Source of the DNA: Octopus bimaculoides
Taxonomy: Eukaryota
Reading direction: 5' to 3'
DNA length: 32,073 bases
Assembly: GCF_001194135.2 (NCBI RefSeq)
Contig: NC_068981.1
Span: forward strand, 30,516,176-30,548,248
Position numbers and translations under genes: made by a program. The notes under the pieces were generated by a model that did not search any database, was not told where the DNA came from, and was given only the letters and a program-made list of their open reading frames with translations. Shown piece by piece: positions 1,649 through 23,604 of this stretch. The stretch's first letter is position 1. Each line of letters begins with the position of its first letter.

Positions 1649-2295
1649 TAGGGTGCGATGGGTAAATTGTCGCCATTTTATATTTTCAAGTTCGCGCATG
1701 TGCATTGTTTGTTTTTGATTTTGTGGACTACACAGTATAGTAGGTCAGTTGGGCACCATCCGTGAGAAAAACAGCACCGTAATGGTGATGTTTCTGCCAG
1801 AAATTTGGAAACGACACGCTGTACTGCTTGGCATTCGCGCCGGAAGCTCCAATACGAACATTTCAGAGTGCTTGGGTGTCAATCTGAGGATAGTGCAATC
1901 TGCGGACATGTATCGAGAATGATAAAAATCAAACATCCAGTCAACATCATGGTGTTTAGAGTGATCATTAGTGATGGTGATGGTATGCCTCCATTTATCT
2001 TTCCACACAACCTCAGACTGAACACGGAGGCCTACATCAAGTGCCTAGAGGAGGTAGTGCTGCCCTGGGTCAAGAGAGTGGCTGCTGGAAGACTTTATGT
2101 CGAGCGACAGGACCCTGTACCATGCCACACAAGCAGGAAAACCCAGTCATGGCTGTCAGACAATTTCTGCGACAACATCACACCTAACATCTGGCCACCT
2201 AACTCCTCAGACTGCAATCCCCTTGATTATTATATGTGAGGGCACTGTTGAGCGAGAGAGACCAACAAAAAACTTAATCAAGGCGACCTTCTAGA
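1649..2295 (+). mobile_element. Tc1/mariner DD37D (maT/mori) transposon remnant, internally deleted and 3'-truncated
   Basis: An N-terminal HTH-like frame from ATG 1782 (MVMFLPEIWKRHAVLLGIRAGSSNTNISECLGVNLRIVQ) is joined at about 1900 to the catalytic C-terminus KHPVNIMVF...EEVVLPW...RQD...WPPNSSDCNPLDYY. Exactly 37 residues lie between the QD Asp and the PLD Asp. A frameshift near 2237 leads into GTVERE. The putative left TIR tagggtgcgatgggtaaattgtcgccatt starts at 1649, after a TA. Confidence 0.85.
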
Positions 2296-7560: not shown

Positions 7561-7818
7561 TCCGAAAAAAACAAAAACATCATTCTACTTAATATCGACG
7601 GCTATGTAGGTGGGGGAAATATTTAATGCAGAATATCACAAATCTAATTACAAATACTAATATGTTGAGATATGAAGATTAACTCAAGGAATAATATGAT
7701 TGAGGTGTATGTGTTGCGGGTTCGGTTACATTGCACGTTATTTCGATTAAATTATTTTACCCTAGCGTCGGATTGACCAAACAAATTCGTTTTGGCTATA
7801 AGCGCAAGTGCTGAAATC

Positions 7819-7986
7819 GTGGGGTTGGGGACAAGTCGATTACATCGATCCCAGTGCATGATTCATACTTATTTAATCGACCTCGTATGTTGGCCTCGGT
7901 GGAATGGGAACTCAGAACGTAAAGAAGGAAGAAAAACTGCTAAGCATTTTGCCCGGCGTGCTAACGATTCTGCCAGCTCATCGTCT
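7819..7986 (-). mobile_element. SINE family A, older degenerate monomer
   Basis: Head ...cgtgctaacgattctgccagctc, B-box region ggaatgggaactc and gtcgattacatcgat hairpin are present; the aaaggatgaaaggc segment is deleted. Confidence 0.75.
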
Positions 7987-8004
7987 TTGATTGACCACTA
8001 TATT

Positions 8005-8432
8005 CTTTTCTACTCAGGTACTAGGCCCGACATTTTTGGGGAGGGGGCCAGTCGATTAGATCGGCCCCAGTGCGCAATTGGTACTTAATTTATCGACCCC
8101 GAAAGGATGAAAGGCAAGGCCGACTTCAGCGGAATTTGAACTCAGAACGTAAAGACAGATGAAATACTGCTAAACCTTCGGCCCGGCGTGCTAACGTTTC
8201 TTATTTTTTTATTGCTCACAAGGGGCTAAACATAGAGGGGATAAACAAGGACAGACAAAGGGATTAAGTCGATTAAATCGACACCAGTGCGTAACTGGTA
8301 CTTAATTTATCGACCCCGAAAGGGTAAAAGGCAAAGTCGACCTCGGCGGAATTTGAACTCAGAAAGTAACAGCAGACGAAATACCGCTAAGCATTTCGCC
8401 CGGCTTGCTAACGTTTCTCCCAGATCGCCGCA
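8005..8432 (-). mobile_element. SINE family A head-to-tail dimer (full monomer + head-truncated monomer with alternative tail) with target-site duplication
   Basis: Two B-boxes (ggaatttgaactc on +). Junction at 8187-8215. TSD gattgaccactatatt (7989-8004) / gattgaccaatatatt (8436-8451), 15/16 identical. Confidence 0.9.
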
Positions 8433-10115
8433 TTAGATTGACCAATATATTGAAAGTAGAATTTGGTAGACGAATACTATGGGNNNNNNNNNNNNNNNNN
8501 NNNNNNNNNNNNNNNNNNNNNNNNNNNNNNNNNNNNNNNNNNNNNNNNNNNNNNNNNNNNNNNNNNNNNNNNNNNNNNNNNNNNNNNNNNNNNNNNNNNN
8601 NNNNNNNNNNNNNNNNNNNNNNNNNNNNNNNNNNNNNNNNNNNNNNNNNNNNNNNNNNNNNNNNNNNNNNNNNNNNNNNNNNNNNNNNNNNNNNNNNNNN
8701 NNNNNNNNNNNNNNNNNNNNNNNNNNNNNNNNNNNNNNNNNNNNNNNNNNNNNNNNNNNNNNNNNNNNNNNNNNNNNNNNNNNNNNNNNNNNNNNNNNNN
8801 NNNNNNNNNNNNNNNNNNNNNNNNNNNNNNNNNNNNNNNNNNNNNNNNNNNNNNNNNNNNNNNNNNNNNNNNNNNNNNNNNNNNNNNNNNNNNNNNNNNN
8901 NNNNNNNNNNNNNNNNNNNNNNNNNNNNNNNNNNNNNNNNNNNNNNNNNNNNNNNNNNNNNNNNNNNNNNNNNNNNNNNNNNNNNNNNNNNNNNNNNNNN
9001 NNNNNNNNNNNNNNNNNNNNNNNNNNNNNNNNNNNNNNNNNNNNNNNNNNNNNNNNNNNNNNNNNNNNNNNNNNNNNNNNNNNNNNNNNNNNNNNNNNNN
9101 NNNNNNNNNNNNNNNNNNNNNNNNNNNNNNNNNNNNNNNNNNNNNNNNNNNNNNNNNNNNNNNNNNNNNNNNNNNCGTGATTTTAGGCTTTTCCCCAACG
9201 ATAATTGCAACATCAGAACCTCAGTGAAGTGAACTTGCTTCACACGAAAATGAACTTGTTTCAATCAAAAGAGAAAGAAGGAAAGAGAGGGAAGGAGAGA
9301 GAGAGAGAGAGAGAGAGAGAGTCGTGGTTTTGAATCGCTAGGAGCCAACTTCATGCACTACAGCGCTCCCTACTCTTAAAAGTAAGATATTTCAATCTAT
9401 AAAACGAAACCTTAACAAAAGAAAATGCTTCCCTTTGGTTACGTTGTTTTAAATATAAACTAGAAAAATGCTTCTTTTCATTTATACATTCATTCGTTAT
9501 TTTATTTTCAGTTACAGATTATTGAAATGATGCACTTGACGTAAAAATAATTCAATAGTTCACTGAGGCTATTGAGGTAGTTTCTACAGTTTTATGAATT
9601 CTATATATGATACATGAGAACGTTATAACATTACTATAGCTTCATAATCTCCTTAAGCCCCAGTTCAGTCTACATTAAATGATTTTTGGTCACCAGATTG
9701 ATAATCCGAAGCAATCCTTCTTAATGTTATTGTACAACAACCAAAAAGTTTACTAAGTTTCCTTGAAATTTATGCTGTAAGATTTTTAAAGTGTTTTTTT
9801 AAAAATTTTTATCCGAATTAATTATAATTTTCTTTTTTAAATAATATATCAGCGTGAATACCGTTTATTAGCTGCAAGGAAGACATGTGATGCAGGATCG
9901 ATTTTCAGTCGAGCCATTTCACATTATTTATTCTCTGTATCATCAATTTTCAATGGTACTTCACATATAGTCGGCCATGCATGATTTGTTCTCTACATAA
10001 TACTTAAAAATCGAAACTTTTAAAAGCTATGGAACATTTTCATTTGCCATAACATATCAAAGGATGCTCACTGTGTAAATATGTTGCGTTTGCAGTATTT
10101 TGGATACTTAAAGTT

Positions 10116-10242
10116 GGCGAGCTGGCAGAATCGTTAGCATGCCGAGAAAAATACTTAGCAGCATTTCTTCCATCTTTACATTCTGAGTTCAAATTCCTCT
10201 GAGGTCGACGTTTGCCTTTCATTCTTTCGGGGTCGATAAATT
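10116..10242 (+). mobile_element. SINE family A, 3'-truncated
   Basis: ggcgagctggcagaatcgttagc head; B-box gagttcaaattcc 10185-10197; gcctttcattctttcggggtcgataaatt body. Confidence 0.85.
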
Positions 10243-10375
10243 ATATCTAGATTTAAATTTTTCTCCCACGGCTCCGATATAACGTTTGATATTTGTACAA
10301 CCATTGTAGCGAACAAATATAGACACACAAACACACAAATGGTAACTTCATAGACAGCCGCTACAATACCAACAA

Positions 10376-11814: not shown

Positions 11815-11982
11815 ACACTGAATTGATTGTAGACTTCCTCGGACAAAATGCTTTGCAGAATTTCTTCCAGCTCTTTGCATTCTCAATTCAAGTTGCACCG
11901 AGCTCAGCTTCCCCTTACATCCTTTCAGGGTGGATAACATAAAGTACTAGCCAAGTACTGAGGACGATTGTAATCGACTAAC
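11815..11982 (+). mobile_element. SINE family A, highly degenerate copy
   Basis: aaatgctttgcagaatt...ttctcaattcaagttgcaccgag...catcctttcagggtggataa...gattgtaatcgact is colinear with the 10116-10242 copy. Confidence 0.6.
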
Positions 11983-12048
11983 GTTTGCTGGCTTTGTGCT
12001 TAAATAAGAAATCAGATTTACCCTGTGTCGTAGTAACCTCTATGTGAA

Positions 12049-12160
12049 GGCGCGTGGTCTAGTGTTTAGTTTCGCACTTAGGATCTCATGGTCGTAGTTT
12101 CAATTCCGGGACCGAGGACTGCATTGTGTTCTTGAGCAAAACACTTCATTCCACGTTAGT
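12049..12160 (+). mobile_element. tRNA-derived SINE head followed by a CORE-like box
   Basis: A-box-like tggtctagtgt and B-box-like gtttcaattcc, then tgtgttcttgagcaaaacactt, which resembles the CORE-SINE ccttgggcaagt box. Confidence 0.6.
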
Positions 12161-12629
12161 CTGTGATTACTGTGTGCACCTGTAAAGGCAATGCTGATAC
12201 GCAGAAATAACCTTTGTGGGTTATTCAGCGAGATATTGCACAACCCTCATCTATCATTTTCGACACCAGAATCCGCCAATAGCACTATAAAACGATATAG
12301 CACTTATGAATAATCACTCCTACGAAAGAAAATAAAGCAAATTTGAAATACAACAAAGCGATCCAAATAGAGAGAAAAAGAAAGCCTAATAAAAAACAAT
12401 GTCCATTCAAGAAAAATCATGGAAAACCTACAGATGCTATTGCGGCTAGCGTGATAGAGGTGAATAAGTCTACACCGTCTTTAGAAACACGAAGGTAGCG
12501 AGCACTAGCATGAAAATTCCTGTATGTAAACACCAAATCACATGCTTATACATGTGTACATCTTGATCTCTCGTTCTACACTTTTCAGCGCTCGTCCGGG
12601 GCATTGGAATTATGAAATAATATGCACTT

Positions 12630-12663: not shown

Positions 12664-12813
12664 GCCTCCCCCACAACACTCACACACACATATCCATATA
12701 CATAGTTATATATGTAAATAAATATATATATATACGTACATATACATATATATACATATACATACATATATATATGCATGCATTGCTATACATACATATA
12801 TGTATACATATAC

Positions 12814-12892
<79 letters not shown>

Positions 12893-12899
12893 TACATAT

Positions 12900-12934
<35 letters not shown>

Positions 12935-13029
12935 GTAGATAGATAGAAAGATAAATATATATACATATATACTCATGTATATATATTTATATATATGAAT
13001 ACACATATGTATTATATAACCCACATATG

Positions 13030-13092
<63 letters not shown>

Positions 13093-13818
13093 NNNNNNNN
13101 NNNNNNNNNNNNNNNNNNNNNNNNNNNNNNNNNNNNNNNNNNNNNNNNNNNNNNNNNNNNNNNNNNNNNNNNNNNNNNNNNNNNNNNNNNNNNNNNNNNN
13201 NNNNNNNNNNNNNNNNNNNNNNNNNNNNNNNNNNNNNNNNNNNNNNNNNNNNNNNNNNNNNNNNNNNNNNNNNNNNNNNNNNNNNNNNNNNNNNNNNNNN
13301 NNNNNNNNNNNNNNNNNNNNNNNNNNNNNNNNNNNNNNNNNNNNNNNNNNNNNNNNNNNNNNNNNNNNNNNNNNNNNNNNNNNNNNNNNNNNNNNNNNNN
13401 NNNNNNNNNNNNNNNNNNNNNNNNNNNNNNNNNNNNNNNNNNNNNNNNNNNNNNNNNNNNNNNNNNNNNNNNNNNNNNNNNNNNNNNNNNNNNNNNNNNN
13501 NNNNNNNNNNNNNNNNNNNNNNNNNNNNNNNNNNNNNNNNNNNNNNNNNNNNNNNNNNNNNNNNNNNNNNNNNNNNNNNNNNNNNNNNNNNNNNNNNNNN
13601 NNNNNNNNNNNNNNNNNNNNNNNNNNNNNNNNNNNNNNNNNNNNNNNNNNNNNNNNNNNNNNNNNNNNNNNNNNNNNNNNNNNNNNNNNNNNNNNNNNNN
13701 NNNNNNNNNNNATATAGACACATAATATGGATACATATATATATAATATGGATATATATGTACAGATATGTATAGTATGAATATATATACATATATATTA
13801 ACTAGCAATTCATATGTG

Positions 13819-19613: not shown

Positions 19614-19660
<47 letters not shown>

Positions 19661-19704: not shown

Positions 19705-19826
19705 AAATCGATAACATCGACCACATGCTCAGCTGGCACTTATTTTATTGACCTCGTAAGGATGAAAGATAAAGGAAACCGCGGCGTATTTTGAACTTAT
19801 ATGTAAAGAACCGGAAGAACTGCCGA
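19705..19826 (-). mobile_element. SINE family A, degenerate, runs into a gap
   Basis: atcgataacatcgac hairpin, ggcacttattttattgacc, aaggatgaaag, attttgaact. Confidence 0.55.
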
Positions 19827-20364: not shown

Positions 20365-21182
20365 CAAGTATGTGGTTCGTAGCAAACAAGCTGATGTCGA
20401 CCAGAAACACACGCTTCAATGGTTACGAAGCTCAGGGCTAAAAGCAGAGAGTGAAGGTTTCATATTAGCTGTTCAAGACCAAAGCGTATCAATCCGGAAC
20501 TACCAAGCCAATGTGATAAAAAATGGAGCTGACCCAAAATGCCGATTCTGTAACGATGCGATTGAAGCAATAGACCACCTAATCTCAGGGTGTAGAGTCT
20601 TAGCACCTGTAGAATATAAAGCAAGACATGACAGAGTCGGCTAGTATTTACACTGGACAATATGTCGGCATTATAAAATCAAAACCGCTGACAAATGGTA
20701 TAAACACCAACCTGAAGCTGTGACTGAGGGAGAAAATGCATCCATTCTCTGGGACTTCCCCGTACATACCAACAGAACTATAAAAGCTAATAAACCGGAT
20801 ATTATAATAAAAGATCAGACAAAGAAGAAGTGTTTATTAATTGACATGAGTATTCCTTACGATCATAATATAGCGGCGAAAGAATTTGACAAGATAAGTA
20901 AATATAAAGACTTGCTAATAGAAATTGAAAAACTGTGGTATCTCAAGGCGACTACCATACCAGTGATTGTAGGATCTCTAGGAATGATAAAAAAAGGTAC
21001 TGAAACCTATTTGAAAATGATACCAGGTTTACCATCCATACCGGAAGTGCCAAAAATCGTGTTAACTGGAACGACTCATGTACTGAGAAGAGCATTATCG
21101 CTGTGAAAACAACATCCATTCATGAATTTATTTATCTATTATTTTTTTTTAAAATACATATTTTACCTGTGAATTTGTGTGT
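20365..21182 (+). mobile_element. R4/Dong-clade RLE non-LTR retrotransposon: C-terminal zinc knuckle, restriction-like endonuclease and start of 3' UTR
   Basis: One frame 20366-21106 with a single internal TAG (20642-20644, RHDRVG*YLHW). C-x2-C-x8-H-x4-C at 20540-20593; KPDI at 20792-20803; LLIDMSIP, KISKYKDL, IPVIVGSLG. Both ends lie in gaps. Confidence 0.92.

Positions 21183-22324: not shown

Positions 22325-22325
<1 letters not shown>
21742..22325 (+). mobile_element. About 580-bp non-coding element bounded by (TAA)n and (TAC)n/(TAA)n
   Basis: Complex sequence with sharp microsatellite boundaries at both ends, no ORF and no obvious Pol III boxes. That it is a recurrent octopus repeat, and its orientation, are recollection and unverified. 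Confidence 0.5.
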
Positions 22326-22365
<40 letters not shown>

Positions 22366-22366
22366 T

Positions 22367-22407
<41 letters not shown>

Positions 22408-22478
22408 TTACTACTACTACTACTACTAATAATAATAATAATGATAATAATAATAATAATAATCATAATAATAATAAT
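22325..22478. repeat. (TAC)n followed by (TAA)n compound microsatellite
   Basis: Read directly; the motif switches at about 22427. Confidence 0.95.
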
Positions 22479-22664
22479 ATAGGCACCGGGTGTGAAATTT
22501 CGGGGGAGGGGCAAGTCGATTTCCACTGGTACTTATGTTATCGATCCCGAAAGGATGAAAGGCAAAGTCGATCTCAGCGGAATTTGAACTCAGAACATTA
22601 AGATAGACGAAATGCCGCTAAACATTTTGTCCAGCGCGTTAACAATTCTGCCAGCTTTCCGTCT
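22479..22664 (-). mobile_element. SINE family A monomer (alternative gggggagggg-type tail) embedded in (TAA)n
   Basis: cgaaaggatgaaaggcaaagtcgatctcagcggaatttgaactcagaac...ttctgccagct, with a tail similar to 8005-8060. Confidence 0.85.
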
Positions 22665-22666
22665 CA

Positions 22667-22822
<156 letters not shown>

Positions 22823-23213: not shown

Positions 23214-23604
23214 TTGCTGTTGGCACTCCGTCGCTTACGACGTCGAGGGTTCCAGTTGATCCGATCAACGGAACAGCCTGATCGTGAAATTAACGTGCAA
23301 GTGGCTGAGCCCTCCACAGACACGTATACCCTTAACGTAGGTAGTTCTCGAGGATATTCAGCGTGACACAGTGTGACAAGGCTGACCCTTTGAAATACAG
23401 GCACAACAGAAACAGGAAGTAAGAGTGAGAGAAAGTTGTGGTGAAAGAGTACAGCAGGGTTCGCCACCACCCCCTGCCGGAGCCTCGTGGAGCTTTAGGT
23501 GTTTTCGCTCAATAAACACTCACAACGCCCGGTCTGGGAATTGAAACCGCGATCCTATGACTGCGAGTCCGCTGCCCTAACCACTGGGCCATTGTGCCTC
23601 CACC
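23214..23604 (-). mobile_element. Full-length tRNA-derived SINE family B with 15-bp TSD
   Basis: A-box TGGCCCAGTGG (23581-23591 rc), B-box GGTTTCAATTCCC (23536-23548 rc), (CAA)-type tail. TSD ggatgacacttgatg (23199-23213) / ggatgacactagatg (23605-23619). Confidence 0.9.

What the first reader, a model, noticed from the sequence alone, without database searches (positions are those of the whole stretch)
8187..8215. Identical 29-bp monomer junction in two independent SINE-A dimers
Seen: cgtgctaacgtttcttatttttttattgc occurs at 8187-8215 and 24100-24128. In element sense, the tail ...gcaataaaaaaataAGAAA runs into (AGAAA)cgttagc of a head-truncated monomer. The loci have different TSDs, flanks and second-monomer tails, so this is not a segmental duplication. 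Inference: either an Alu-like dimeric SINE lineage with an exchangeable second arm, or a precise AGAAA-microhomology-guided template jump or circular-template multimerisation during reverse transcription. I cannot tell whether this is already described.
Basis: partly seen in the sequence, partly recalled or inferred. Interest (0 to 1): 0.75.

Follow-up and report, generated by a model that had tools for sequence, protein, structure and literature searches.

The report
Octopus SINE multimers, one fixed junction
Two short retroposon (SINE) copies in an octopus genome window are each a head-to-tail pair joined at exactly the same nucleotide, and the same joint is found in other octopod sequences, so this is a compound SINE lineage of a kind already known from other animals rather than a new type of element.

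Summary
The 29-mer is exact at 8187-8215 and 24100-24128. Its identity is not special in itself. Both sites lie in homologous SINE dimers that are 86-90% alike, where an identical run of 29 or more is expected in 50-88% of cases. What is real is the shared joint. A full unit with a "type-1" tail (...GCAATAAAAAAATAAG(AAA)) runs straight into a second unit that starts at CGTTAGCAC and lacks its first 13-16 bases.

Each whole dimer is flanked by its own target-site duplication (15/16 and 19/20 matches). The flanks differ, and the second units belong to two tail families, so this is not a segmental or assembly duplication.

The same joint occurs in six further loci from public assemblies. They include arrays of at least 3 units, two or three further heterodimers, and one dimer cut off inside the first unit.

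Best reading: a compound (dimeric or multimeric) SINE lineage retroposed as single cDNAs, with the joint made by a reverse-transcriptase template switch.

I could not resolve whether the joint is inherited from master copies or re-made each time.

The host is Octopus bimaculoides or a close relative. Interest is modest.

The parts
8187..8215 (-). 29-mer of the finding, copy 1: last 20 nt of the type-1 tail of arm 1 plus the first 9 nt (CGTTAGCAC) of the head-cut arm 2
   Evidence: (exact match)
24100..24128 (-). 29-mer of the finding, copy 2: the same joint in dimer B
8197..8431 (-). Dimer A, arm 1 (upstream unit in element sense). Full head GCGGCGATCTGGGAGAAACG..., central domain, and type-1 tail ending ...GAGCAATAAAAAAATAAG + AAA. 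8197-8201 is the AGAAA whose origin (tail or head) is ambiguous.
8005..8196 (-). Dimer A, arm 2 (downstream unit). Starts at CGTTAGCACGCC and lacks the first 13-16 nt of the head. Type-2 tail ...CTGGCCCCCTCCCCAAAAATGTCGGGCCTAGTACCTGAGTAGAAAAG.
8436..8451 (.). Target-site duplication of dimer A, copy next to the head of arm 1 (GATTGACCAATATATT on +)
   Evidence: (15/16 match, 0 of 500 shuffles)
7989..8004 (.). Target-site duplication of dimer A, copy next to the tail of arm 2 (GATTGACCACTATATT on +). Its AATATA part overlaps the canonical end of the type-2 tail.
   Evidence: P0145 shows the type-2 tail ends ...AAGAATATA
24110..24346 (-). Dimer B, arm 1: full head GGCGGCGAGCTGGCAGAAACG..., type-1 tail ...GGGCAATAAAAAAATAAG + AAA (24110-24114)
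23912..24109 (-). Dimer B, arm 2: starts at CGTTAGCACGTC, with a type-1 body and tail (tail shortened: ...TTTAGCCCCTTAAAATAAAATAAG, overlapping the TSD)
24351..24370 (.). Target-site duplication of dimer B, head side (TGACACAGAACTTATTTTAT on +). 4 extra bases (TTGC) lie between it and the head.
   Evidence: (19/20, 0 of 500 shuffles)
23892..23911 (.). Target-site duplication of dimer B, tail side (TGATACAGAACTTATTTTAT on +). The site lies in a 33-bp minisatellite, and removing the dimer plus one copy restores the period.
7790..7985 (-). Older single copy of the same SINE superfamily (type-2-like tail, full head with AGAATCG). Dimer A was inserted 4-5 nt upstream of its head.
22480..22660 (-). 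Single copy, full head (AGAATTG), type-2-like tail ending in (ATT)n
10113..10243 (+). Single copy, full head (AGAATCG), 3' part missing
11840..12015 (+). 5'-truncated single copy with another tail that reads ...GCTTAAATAAGAAAT
19734..19806 (-). Fragment of a copy next to an assembly gap; its tail is followed by (ATT)n(AGT)n

Best explanation
The element is a Pol III-type SINE of octopods: a head with box A/B-like motifs, a CORE-like centre, and at least two alternative 3' tails. Its 'type-1' members also exist as compound head-to-tail multimers.

In a multimer, every unit after the first starts at ...(AAA)CGTTAGCAC, directly after the complete type-1 tail of the unit before it.

A whole multimer is copied into one cDNA and integrated in one target-primed reverse transcription event. 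This part is shown by the TSDs around the whole dimers and by a dimer that is 5'-truncated inside arm 1.

The joint itself was most likely created when the reverse transcriptase, nearing the 5' end of one SINE RNA, switched to the 3' end of a type-1 SINE RNA, helped by 2-5 nt of shared sequence (AG..AAA). This is inferred.

I think the joint is then mostly inherited. Compound copies act as source genes, transcribed from the promoter of the first unit through the terminator-free A-rich type-1 tail, and recognised by the partner LINE through the tail of the last unit. Copy-choice between the homologous units would vary the unit number (2, 3 or more) and swap the last unit (type 1 or type 2). This is inferred and not shown.
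For: The same joint occurs without any indel in the two window dimers.

It also occurs in six further loci from Logan assemblies: L015, L014, L012, L010, L007 (two joints) and L005 (two joints). L007's first joint lies outside the ORF that was used to find the locus.

TSDs flank the whole dimers, 15/16 and 19/20 matches with 0 of 500 shuffles each, and there is no TSD around single arms.

In L012, arm 1 is only the last ~49 nt of the type-1 tail, and the sequence upstream is no more SINE-like than shuffles. The joint therefore lay inside one cDNA that was cut short.

Type-1 to type-2 heterodimers with the same joint occur at window A, L014 and L010, and probably L012, whose second arm ends in a type-2-like (ATT)n tail.

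The consensus has no run of 4 or more T's, so Pol III can read through the joint. The only T4 runs in the two dimers are single-copy C-to-T changes.

Compound SINEs that amplify as units make up 13% of described families (PMC3531059).
Against: No arm-specific diagnostic positions were found. Over 145 shared nt, A1-B1 is 91.0% and A1-B2 is 91.7% identical, and the branch lengths are about 5.5, 8.5 and 7.5. A long-lived master dimer should have accumulated differences between its arms, unless copy-choice keeps them alike.

Old dimers (63-80% alike) and young dimers (~90%) share the joint, which fits recurrent formation equally well.

Two kinds of second arm require either several masters or module exchange.

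The six external loci were found with a query that contains the joint, so they prove recurrence but not frequency.

Confidence: 0.45

Rival explanations
1. Recurrent template jump. Every multimer is made anew during target-primed reverse transcription. The LINE reverse transcriptase copies one SINE RNA of any tail family up to ...CGTTAGC/AAA near its 5' end. It then continues on the 3' end of a separate type-1 SINE RNA. The switch point is always the same because of the short AG(AAA) match or a fixed stop in the template. No dimeric source gene is needed.
For: The young dimer B has two arms that are both as close to A1 as to each other, with no arm-specific differences. Old and young dimers carry the same joint. 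The second arm can be type 1 or type 2, and arrays have 3 or more units. Whole-array TSDs and the truncated L012 fit equally well. Type-2 elements with an AGAAACG head exist, for example P0145 of O. bimaculoides, so suitable donors are available. Template switching is the accepted origin of chimeric SINEs (PMC5729268).
Against: Template jumps described for LINE-type enzymes occur at the 5' end of the donor RNA (established knowledge, not tested here), whereas here 13-16 nt remain uncopied every time. If the type-1 tail ends at ...AATAAG, as the three terminal tails suggest, the homology is only 2 nt, which is weak for single-nucleotide precision. Three of the single type-2-like copies in the window read AGAATCG or AGAATTG at the switch site, and none of the four joints with a type-2 or type-2-like second arm carries that T.
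Confidence: 0.33
2. Targeted nested insertion. A type-1 SINE inserts into the head of a resident SINE at AGAAA/CG, because the antisense TTTCT there pairs with the 3' end of the type-1 RNA. The 5' end of the new cDNA is then resolved by homology with the resident head. The result looks like a full arm 1 plus a head-cut arm 2, and the outer TSDs are those of the resident copy.
For: This would explain the fixed site, why arm 1 always has a type-1 tail, why arm 2 can be any family, and why arrays can grow unit by unit. Outer TSDs are compatible. Insertion of one SINE into another is one of the two origins discussed for mammalian B2, Dip and Ves tandems (PMC8466645).
Against: L012 has a 5'-truncated arm 1 with no stub of a resident head and no duplicated CGTTAGC... 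segment upstream. B1 is not younger than B2. The model also needs a homology-resolved 5' end in every case.
Confidence: 0.12
3. Post-insertion DNA events or artefact. This covers local tandem duplication or unequal crossing-over of a single copy (a nascent SINE-derived satellite), a single circular RNA copied more than once round, or an assembly duplication.
For: TRF reports locus B as a 218-bp repeat of 1.8 copies at 90%. The window is a gapped draft with 13 runs of N. SINE-derived satellites exist in reptiles (PMC10702118).
Against: Arms within a dimer are not more alike than arms of different loci. In A, L014 and L010, and probably L012, the two arms have different tails. The two window loci differ by about 10% and have different flanks and TSDs. 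The same joint appears in contigs of several independent runs.
Confidence: 0.05

Closest known systems
Compound (dimeric or trimeric) SINE families that amplify as one unit: Alu, B1-dID, Twin, and the colugo CYN and armadillo DAS monomer/dimer/trimer series (SINEBase definitions, PMC3531059; cited in PMC4758252)
   Same: Head-to-tail units with a fixed joint. TSDs surround the whole compound element. The downstream unit is not a complete independent element. About 13% of described SINE families are of this kind.
   Different: Here the units are nearly identical to each other, with no arm-specific differences seen. The last unit comes in two tail families. The unit number varies (2, 3 or more). 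No dimer transcript or dimer-specific subfamily has been shown.
Tandem SINE multimers of mammals: B2 (about 40% of copies), Dip (49%, up to 8 units), Ves (11.5%) (PMC8466645; PMC10702118)
   Same: Head-to-tail arrays of SINE units are frequent, may mix families (B1-B2, Dip-B1), and have an unresolved origin: insertion into a tail or a dimeric template.
   Different: Those arrays are described as consisting of full-length units joined at A-rich tails. Here every downstream unit lacks the same 13-16 head bases and there is no spacer.
Chimeric retroposons made by template switching of a LINE reverse transcriptase (for example PittSINE from TguSINE1 plus tRNA-Asp, PMC5729268)
   Same: One cDNA copied from two RNAs, flanked by one TSD. 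This is the likely way the joint arose.
   Different: Those are single founding events that gave a new family. Here the same joint is seen with different partners, and possibly arose repeatedly.
Octopus SINEs OR1, OR2 and OK (Ohshima and Okada 1994, cited in PMC4824008, PMC4758252, PMC5804259). Those papers place either OR1 or OR2 in the CORE-SINE superfamily.
   Same: Octopod host, a Pol III-type head, and a centre (GCCTTTCATCCTTTCGGGGTCGATAAATTAAGTACC) that from memory resembles the 3' half of the CORE domain.
   Different: No reference sequence was available, so identity with OR1, OR2 or OK could not be tested. I found no mention of dimers for them in the searchable literature.
SINE-derived satellites of squamates (PMC10702118)
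   Same: Tandem units derived from SINEs.
   Different: Those are long arrays of parts of SINEs that grow at the DNA level. Here there are 2-3 whole units inside one TSD, dispersed like retroposons.

Membership tests
SINE (SINEBase definition, PMC3531059) | Short (<1 kb), interspersed, many copies | tested here: met
   There are 9 copies or fragments of about 200-235 nt in 26.7 kb of non-N sequence, on both strands. Related copies occur in O. bimaculoides proteins and in Logan contigs. The genome copy number was not measured.
SINE (SINEBase definition, PMC3531059) | Head at least 60% identical to a tRNA, 5S or 7SL RNA over at least 60 nt | tested here: not met
   ARAGORN found no tRNA in the window. 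Rfam gave no hit at the gathering score and no tRNA, 5S or 7SL hit at E <= 10 on 23880-24380. Box A-like (TGGCAGAAACG or TTAGCACGCCGG) and box B-like (GAGTTCAAATTCC) motifs are seen by eye only.
SINE (retroposon hallmarks) | Variable-length target-site duplications at the ends | tested here: met
   16-nt (15/16) and 20-nt (19/20) direct repeats flank dimers A and B, with 0 of 500 shuffles each.
SINE (retroposon hallmarks) | 3' end shared with a partner LINE | tested here: inconclusive
   The only LINE fragment in the window (20372-21106, weak zf-RVT) has an unrelated 3' end. No other LINE was available.
Compound (dimeric) SINE amplifying as a unit (Alu-like) | The same joint in independent copies | tested here: met
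   About 10 joints in 8 loci sit at the same position. Three of them were unselected: window A, window B, and the first joint of L007.
Compound (dimeric) SINE amplifying as a unit (Alu-like) | TSD around the whole compound element, none around single units | tested here: met
   for both window dimers. The old external copies are too decayed to test.
Compound (dimeric) SINE amplifying as a unit (Alu-like) | Arm-specific or dimer-specific diagnostic substitutions shared by copies | tested here: not met
   A1-B1 is 91.0%, A1-B2 is 91.7% and B1-B2 is 89.0% identical, and the B2 branch is not longer than the others. Only three type-1 arms were available, so power is very low.
Compound (dimeric) SINE amplifying as a unit (Alu-like) | Transcript of the whole dimer from the first unit's promoter | not testable with these tools
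[quoted passage not shown] | Full-length units, each with its own ends, and variable joints in the A-rich tail | tested here: not met
   The downstream units always lack the first 13-16 nt, the joint is fixed, and there is no internal TSD.
CORE-SINE superfamily (OR1/OR2-like) | Central domain homologous to the CORE consensus | not testable with these tools
   No CORE, OR1 or OR2 reference sequence is held. The resemblance of the centre to the 3' half of CORE is from memory only.
SINE-derived satellite | Long arrays, with units of an array more alike than units of different loci | tested here: not met
   There are 2-3 units per locus. B1-B2 (89.0%) is not above A1-B1 or A1-B2. Some dimers have arms from different tail families.

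The most novel reading that the evidence does not exclude
The joint is not inherited but re-made at each insertion. On this reading the partner reverse transcriptase regularly stops 13-16 nt short of the 5' end of a SINE RNA, at a fixed position in the tRNA-like head. The stop might be caused, for example, by a modified base or a processed 5' end. The enzyme then resumes on the 3' end of a type-1 SINE RNA, producing n-mers whose unit number follows a geometric series. That would make this SINE a natural, countable reporter of template jumping by a LINE enzyme in vivo.
Probability: 0.3. Interest if true: 0.55.

Novelty: new member of a known kind. Interest (0 to 1): 0.3.

Why it matters
SINEs make up several per cent of octopus genomes (4% in O. 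bimaculoides per PMC12988792, 11.6% in O. vulgaris per PMC13282606). They have been linked to genome reshuffling and neural expression.

If a sizeable share of them are compound elements with a fixed joint, three things follow:
- Repeat libraries and copy counts that treat them as monomers are off.
- Age estimates that pool the arms are affected.
- The family offers a clean case for asking how compound SINEs arise, by master dimers or by repeated template jumps. That question is left open even for mouse B2 and jerboa Dip tandems (PMC8466645).

This is useful for cephalopod repeat annotation but would not surprise a transposon specialist.

Tried and rejected
Searches that led nowhere:
- A word-indexed protein search with the 77-aa ORF across the joint found nothing.
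- Exact-pattern scans of the metagenome contigs for the joint and for the SINE core, and of the prokaryote genome contigs, gave 0 hits.
- A mariner-like ORF led to one O. bimaculoides locus (L001, half N) and three ENA contigs (L002-L004, ERZ21867824). None of them holds the SINE.
- A LINE ORF search gave only corals, shrimp and unnamed contigs.
- Contig look-ups of P0020 and P0146 failed, and all 12 look-ups are spent.
- The look-up of sequencing runs and read laying were closed, so there was no read depth, no census and no RNA evidence.
- Sequence strings and run accessions were not found in any paper.
- No paper on octopus SINE dimers was found. The Albertin 2015 paper is not held.

Explanations rejected:
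- Assembly or segmental duplication, because of about 10% divergence and different TSDs.
- A single circular template, because of the heterodimers.
- Simple insertion into a tail, because of the fixed head cut and the absence of an internal TSD.
- The 29-mer as evidence of selection or recent copying, because a run of that length is expected from homology.

Not established:
- A tRNA origin of the head could not be shown.

Full report
**Observation**

The 29-mer CGTGCTAACGTTTCTTATTTTTTTATTGC is present exactly at 8187-8215 and 24100-24128 and nowhere else in the window, even with 3 mismatches. Both copies lie inside repeats on the minus strand.

A BLAST of one unit against the window finds nine copies or fragments of the same short element:
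- 7894-7979
- 8053-8201
- 8200-8431
- 10116-10243
- 11840-11947
- 19734-19806
- 22527-22656
- 23915-24114
- 24113-24345

The window is a gapped draft with 13 runs of N totalling 5377 N.

**Anatomy**

Read in element sense, each of the two loci is a head-to-tail pair.
- Arm 1 has a full head (GGCGGCGAGCTGGCAGAAACGTTAGCACGCC...). It has a centre shared by all copies (...GAGTTCAAATTCCGCCGAGGTCGACTTTGCCTTTCATCCTTTCGGGGTCGATAAATTAAGTACC...). Its 'type-1' tail reads ...CCTTTGTCTGTCCTTGTTTGTCCCCTCTATGTTTAGCCCCTTGTGGGCAATAAAAAAATAAG(AAA).
- Arm 2 follows with no spacer. It begins at CGTTAGCACG, so it lacks the first 13-16 bases of the head. The exact number depends on whether the AAA belongs to the tail or to the head.

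In locus B, arm 2 is again type 1. In locus A, arm 2 has a different 'type-2' tail (...CTGGCCCCCTCCCCAAAAATGTCGGGCCTAGTACCTGAGTAGAAAAG), related to the tails of the single copies at 7790-7985 and 22480-22660.

**Is the 29-mer more than chance?**

Against shuffled sequence, yes. That is the wrong null, however. The two dimers align over about 400 nt at 86-90% identity with no indel at the joint. In simulations, a pair of that length and identity has an exact run of 29 or more in 51-88% of cases. The identity of the 29-mer therefore says nothing by itself. The finding is the shared junction point.

**Independent insertions, each a single event**

Dimer A is flanked by AATATATTGGTCAATC / AATATAGTGGTCAATC (8436-8451 and 7989-8004). 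Dimer B is flanked by ATAAAATAAGTTCTGTGTCA / ATAAAATAAGTTCTGTATCA (24351-24370 and 23892-23911). Neither match was reached by any of 500 shuffles.

B sits in a 33-bp minisatellite. Removing the dimer and one repeat copy restores the period, so the repeat is a true target-site duplication. No duplication flanks a single arm.

Over 145 shared nt, the arms are 84-92% alike:

| Pair | Identity |
|---|---|
| A1-B1 | 91.0% |
| A1-B2 | 91.7% |
| B1-B2 | 89.0% |
| A2 vs the type-1 arms | 84-87% |

This excludes an assembly or segmental duplication. It also excludes a local tandem duplication, because arms of one locus are not more alike than arms of different loci.

**Host**

A mariner-like ORF in the window (1805-2239) is closest to an Octopus bimaculoides protein. 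A locus of the O. bimaculoides assembly GCA_001194135.2 shares several other repeats with the window at 72-89% identity. The closest protein-database relatives of the SINE-derived ORF are O. bimaculoides entries XP_052828027.1, A0A0L8GQ56 and XP_052826731.1. The window is therefore from O. bimaculoides or a near relative.

**Does the joint recur elsewhere?**

As a workaround, I searched the 77-aa antisense ORF that crosses joint B against 1.84 billion representative proteins. Nineteen proteins came back. Four are unrelated low-complexity repeats, and about fifteen are translations of this SINE.
- Six carry the translated joint (ANVSYFFIA-like): P0148, P0153, P0156, P0158, P0161 and P0162.
- P0161 appears to carry it twice. 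The second, frame-shifted copy is a diverged match read by eye, both in the protein and in L005.
- Seven read through a full head (RRANVSASSPP-like): P0145, P0149, P0150, P0151, P0152, P0154 and P0157.

The DNA behind the six junction-bearing proteins was retrieved as Logan contigs of runs SRR11869384, 85, 90, 91 and 94. The organism is not stated, and the contigs are identical between runs.

In all six loci a type-1 tail ...AATAAG(A)AA abuts a CGTTAGCAC-type cut head at the same position:
- L015, L014 and L012 align across the joint without a gap.
- L010 shows the joint with CpG decay.
- L007 holds two joints, so at least three units. The first joint lies outside the ORF used to find the locus.
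- L005 also holds two joints.
- L014 and L010 are type-1 to type-2 heterodimers like window locus A. L012, whose second arm ends in a type-2-like (ATT)n tail, is probably one too.

These copies are only 63-80% like each other and like the window copies, so they are old.

There is an ascertainment caveat. The query contained the joint, so these loci prove that the joint recurs, but they do not show how common it is or that other joints are absent. The unselected joints (window A, window B, and the first joint of L007) are 3 of 3 at the same point. In the window, all three type-1 units sit in dimers.

**Mechanism: what is shown**

Whole multimers are integrated in one event, as the outer TSDs show.

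In L012, arm 1 is only the last ~49 nt of the type-1 tail. The sequence upstream is no more SINE-like than shuffled sequence. The joint was therefore inside a single cDNA that was cut short. This is what 5' truncation of a compound cDNA predicts. It is not what insertion of one SINE into the head of another predicts, because that would leave a head stub and a duplicated CGTTAGC... segment.

A single circular template cannot give heterodimers.

**Mechanism: what is inferred**

The joint looks like a reverse-transcriptase template switch from near the 5' end of one SINE RNA to the 3' end of a type-1 SINE RNA.

- The three terminal type-1 tails available end at AATAAG-, AAATTAG- and AAATAC-like sequence without AAA. 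These are B arm 2, L007 unit 3 and the last unit of L005. B arm 2 is ambiguous because its TSD overlaps the tail.
- Copy c11840 instead reads AAATAAGAAAT.
- The overlap is therefore somewhere between 2 and 5 nt.

Three single type-2-like copies in the window read AGAATCG or AGAATTG at that place. None of the four joints with a type-2 or type-2-like second arm carries the T. However, a type-2 element with AGAAACG does exist in O. bimaculoides (P0145).

**Master copies or repeated jumps?**

I could not decide this.

For inheritance:
- The precision of the joint despite weak homology.
- Known template jumps occur at RNA 5' ends, not 13-16 nt before them (established knowledge, not tested here).
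- Compound SINEs that amplify as units are common, at 13% of families (PMC3531059).
- The consensus has no T4 terminator before the end of the last unit.

For repeated formation:
- There are no arm-specific differences in the young dimers.
- Old and young dimers share the joint.
- There are two kinds of last unit, and the unit number varies.

Copy-choice between homologous units of a compound RNA would reconcile these facts with inheritance. My estimates are:

| Explanation | Probability |
|---|---|
| Propagating compound templates | 0.45 |
| Recurrent jumps | 0.33 |
| Nested targeted insertion | 0.12 |
| DNA-level events or artefact | 0.05 |

**Comparison with what is known**

The closest known kinds are the following.
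- Compound SINE families such as Alu, B1-dID, Twin, CYN and DAS.
- The very frequent tandem multimers of mouse B2 (about 40% of copies), jerboa Dip (49%, up to eight units) and bat Ves (11.5%). Their authors state that they do not know whether these arose by insertion into tails or from dimeric templates (PMC8466645; PMC10702118).

The octopus case differs from the latter in that every downstream unit lacks the same head bases.

Membership as a tRNA-derived SINE could not be confirmed. ARAGORN and Rfam find no tRNA, 5S or 7SL similarity even at E <= 10. The box A and box B motifs are seen by eye only.

The centre resembles the 3' half of the CORE domain. The octopus SINE OR1 or OR2 is listed as a CORE-SINE (PMC4824008, PMC4758252, PMC5804259). 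No reference sequence was available, so this remains a lead from memory.

I found no description of octopus SINE dimers in the searchable literature. Subscription papers, including Ohshima and Okada 1994 and Albertin 2015, are not held.

**Verdict**

This is a real, recurrent compound SINE with a fixed head-cut joint in octopods. It is a new member of a known kind and of modest interest. The one open and testable question is whether the joint is inherited or re-made.

Noticed in passing
window 7972-8025; also P0145 (O. bimaculoides XP_052828027.1) and L014: A type-2 tail lies next to a FULL head of another SINE three times. In the window, the tail of A arm 2 is 16 nt (the TSD) from the head of the copy at 7790-7985. 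In P0145 the translated type-2 tail (YILVYS...) abuts the full head (SASSPP) with no spacer. In L014, unit a and unit b are about 15 nt apart. This may be chance in SINE-dense DNA, a preference for inserting just upstream of SINE heads, or a second kind of end-to-end joint.
   Followed up: partly
window 23600-23911 and 24351-24440: A 33-bp minisatellite (unit about TATTTTATCGATCAGAGAACATGATAGGGTGCT) is the insertion site of dimer B. The target ...ATAAAATAAG/TTCTGT resembles the SINE tail end, which suggests priming by tail-target pairing.
   Followed up: partly
window 12045-12200 (+): A different SINE-like element lies directly after copy c11840. It has a tRNA-like head (GGCGCGTGGTCTAGTG...GTAGTTTCAATTCCGGGACC) followed by TGTGTTCTTGAGCAAAACACTTCATTCC. 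From memory this resembles the 5' half of the CORE domain, so it could be OR-type. It is a single copy in the window, and ARAGORN does not call it.
   Followed up: partly
window 1805-2239 (+): Remnant of a mariner/Tc1-like transposase ORF (144 aa). It is 65% identical to O. bimaculoides LOC128250757 and 72% identical to an ENA contig protein. There is no Pfam hit at E <= 0.01.
   Followed up: partly
window 20372-21106 (+): C-terminal fragment of a LINE ORF (weak zf-RVT, E 5e-4), with relatives in corals, shrimp and many unnamed contigs. Its 3' end is unrelated to the SINE tails, so it is not the partner LINE.
   Followed up: partly
window 19614-19660, 22325-22479, 22668-22822: The type-2-like SINE copies at 19734-19806 and 22480-22660 end in (ATT)n that grades into (AGT)n/(TAC)n microsatellites, and the second is also preceded by (TTA)n. 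The tail repeat of this family seems to seed long trinucleotide arrays.
   Followed up: no
window, 13 runs of N (for example 1074-1598, 8484-9175, 12696-13711 region): Most assembly gaps are bordered by di- or tetranucleotide microsatellites (AT, CA, TATG). One gap starts 33 nt beyond the TSD of dimer A, so the 5' context of locus A is short.
   Followed up: no
L002-L004 (ENA ERZ21867824 contigs): Sixty kb of an unnamed long-read assembly share the mariner-like element with the window (83% DNA identity) but hold no copy of this SINE. That organism, presumably a mollusc, lacks the family or has it at much lower density.
   Followed up: partly
P0146 (O. bimaculoides A0A0L8GQ56, 706 aa): An aminopeptidase-N-like gene model whose N-terminal 95 residues include an antisense translation of this SINE. 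This is either an exonised SINE or an annotation artefact.
   Followed up: no
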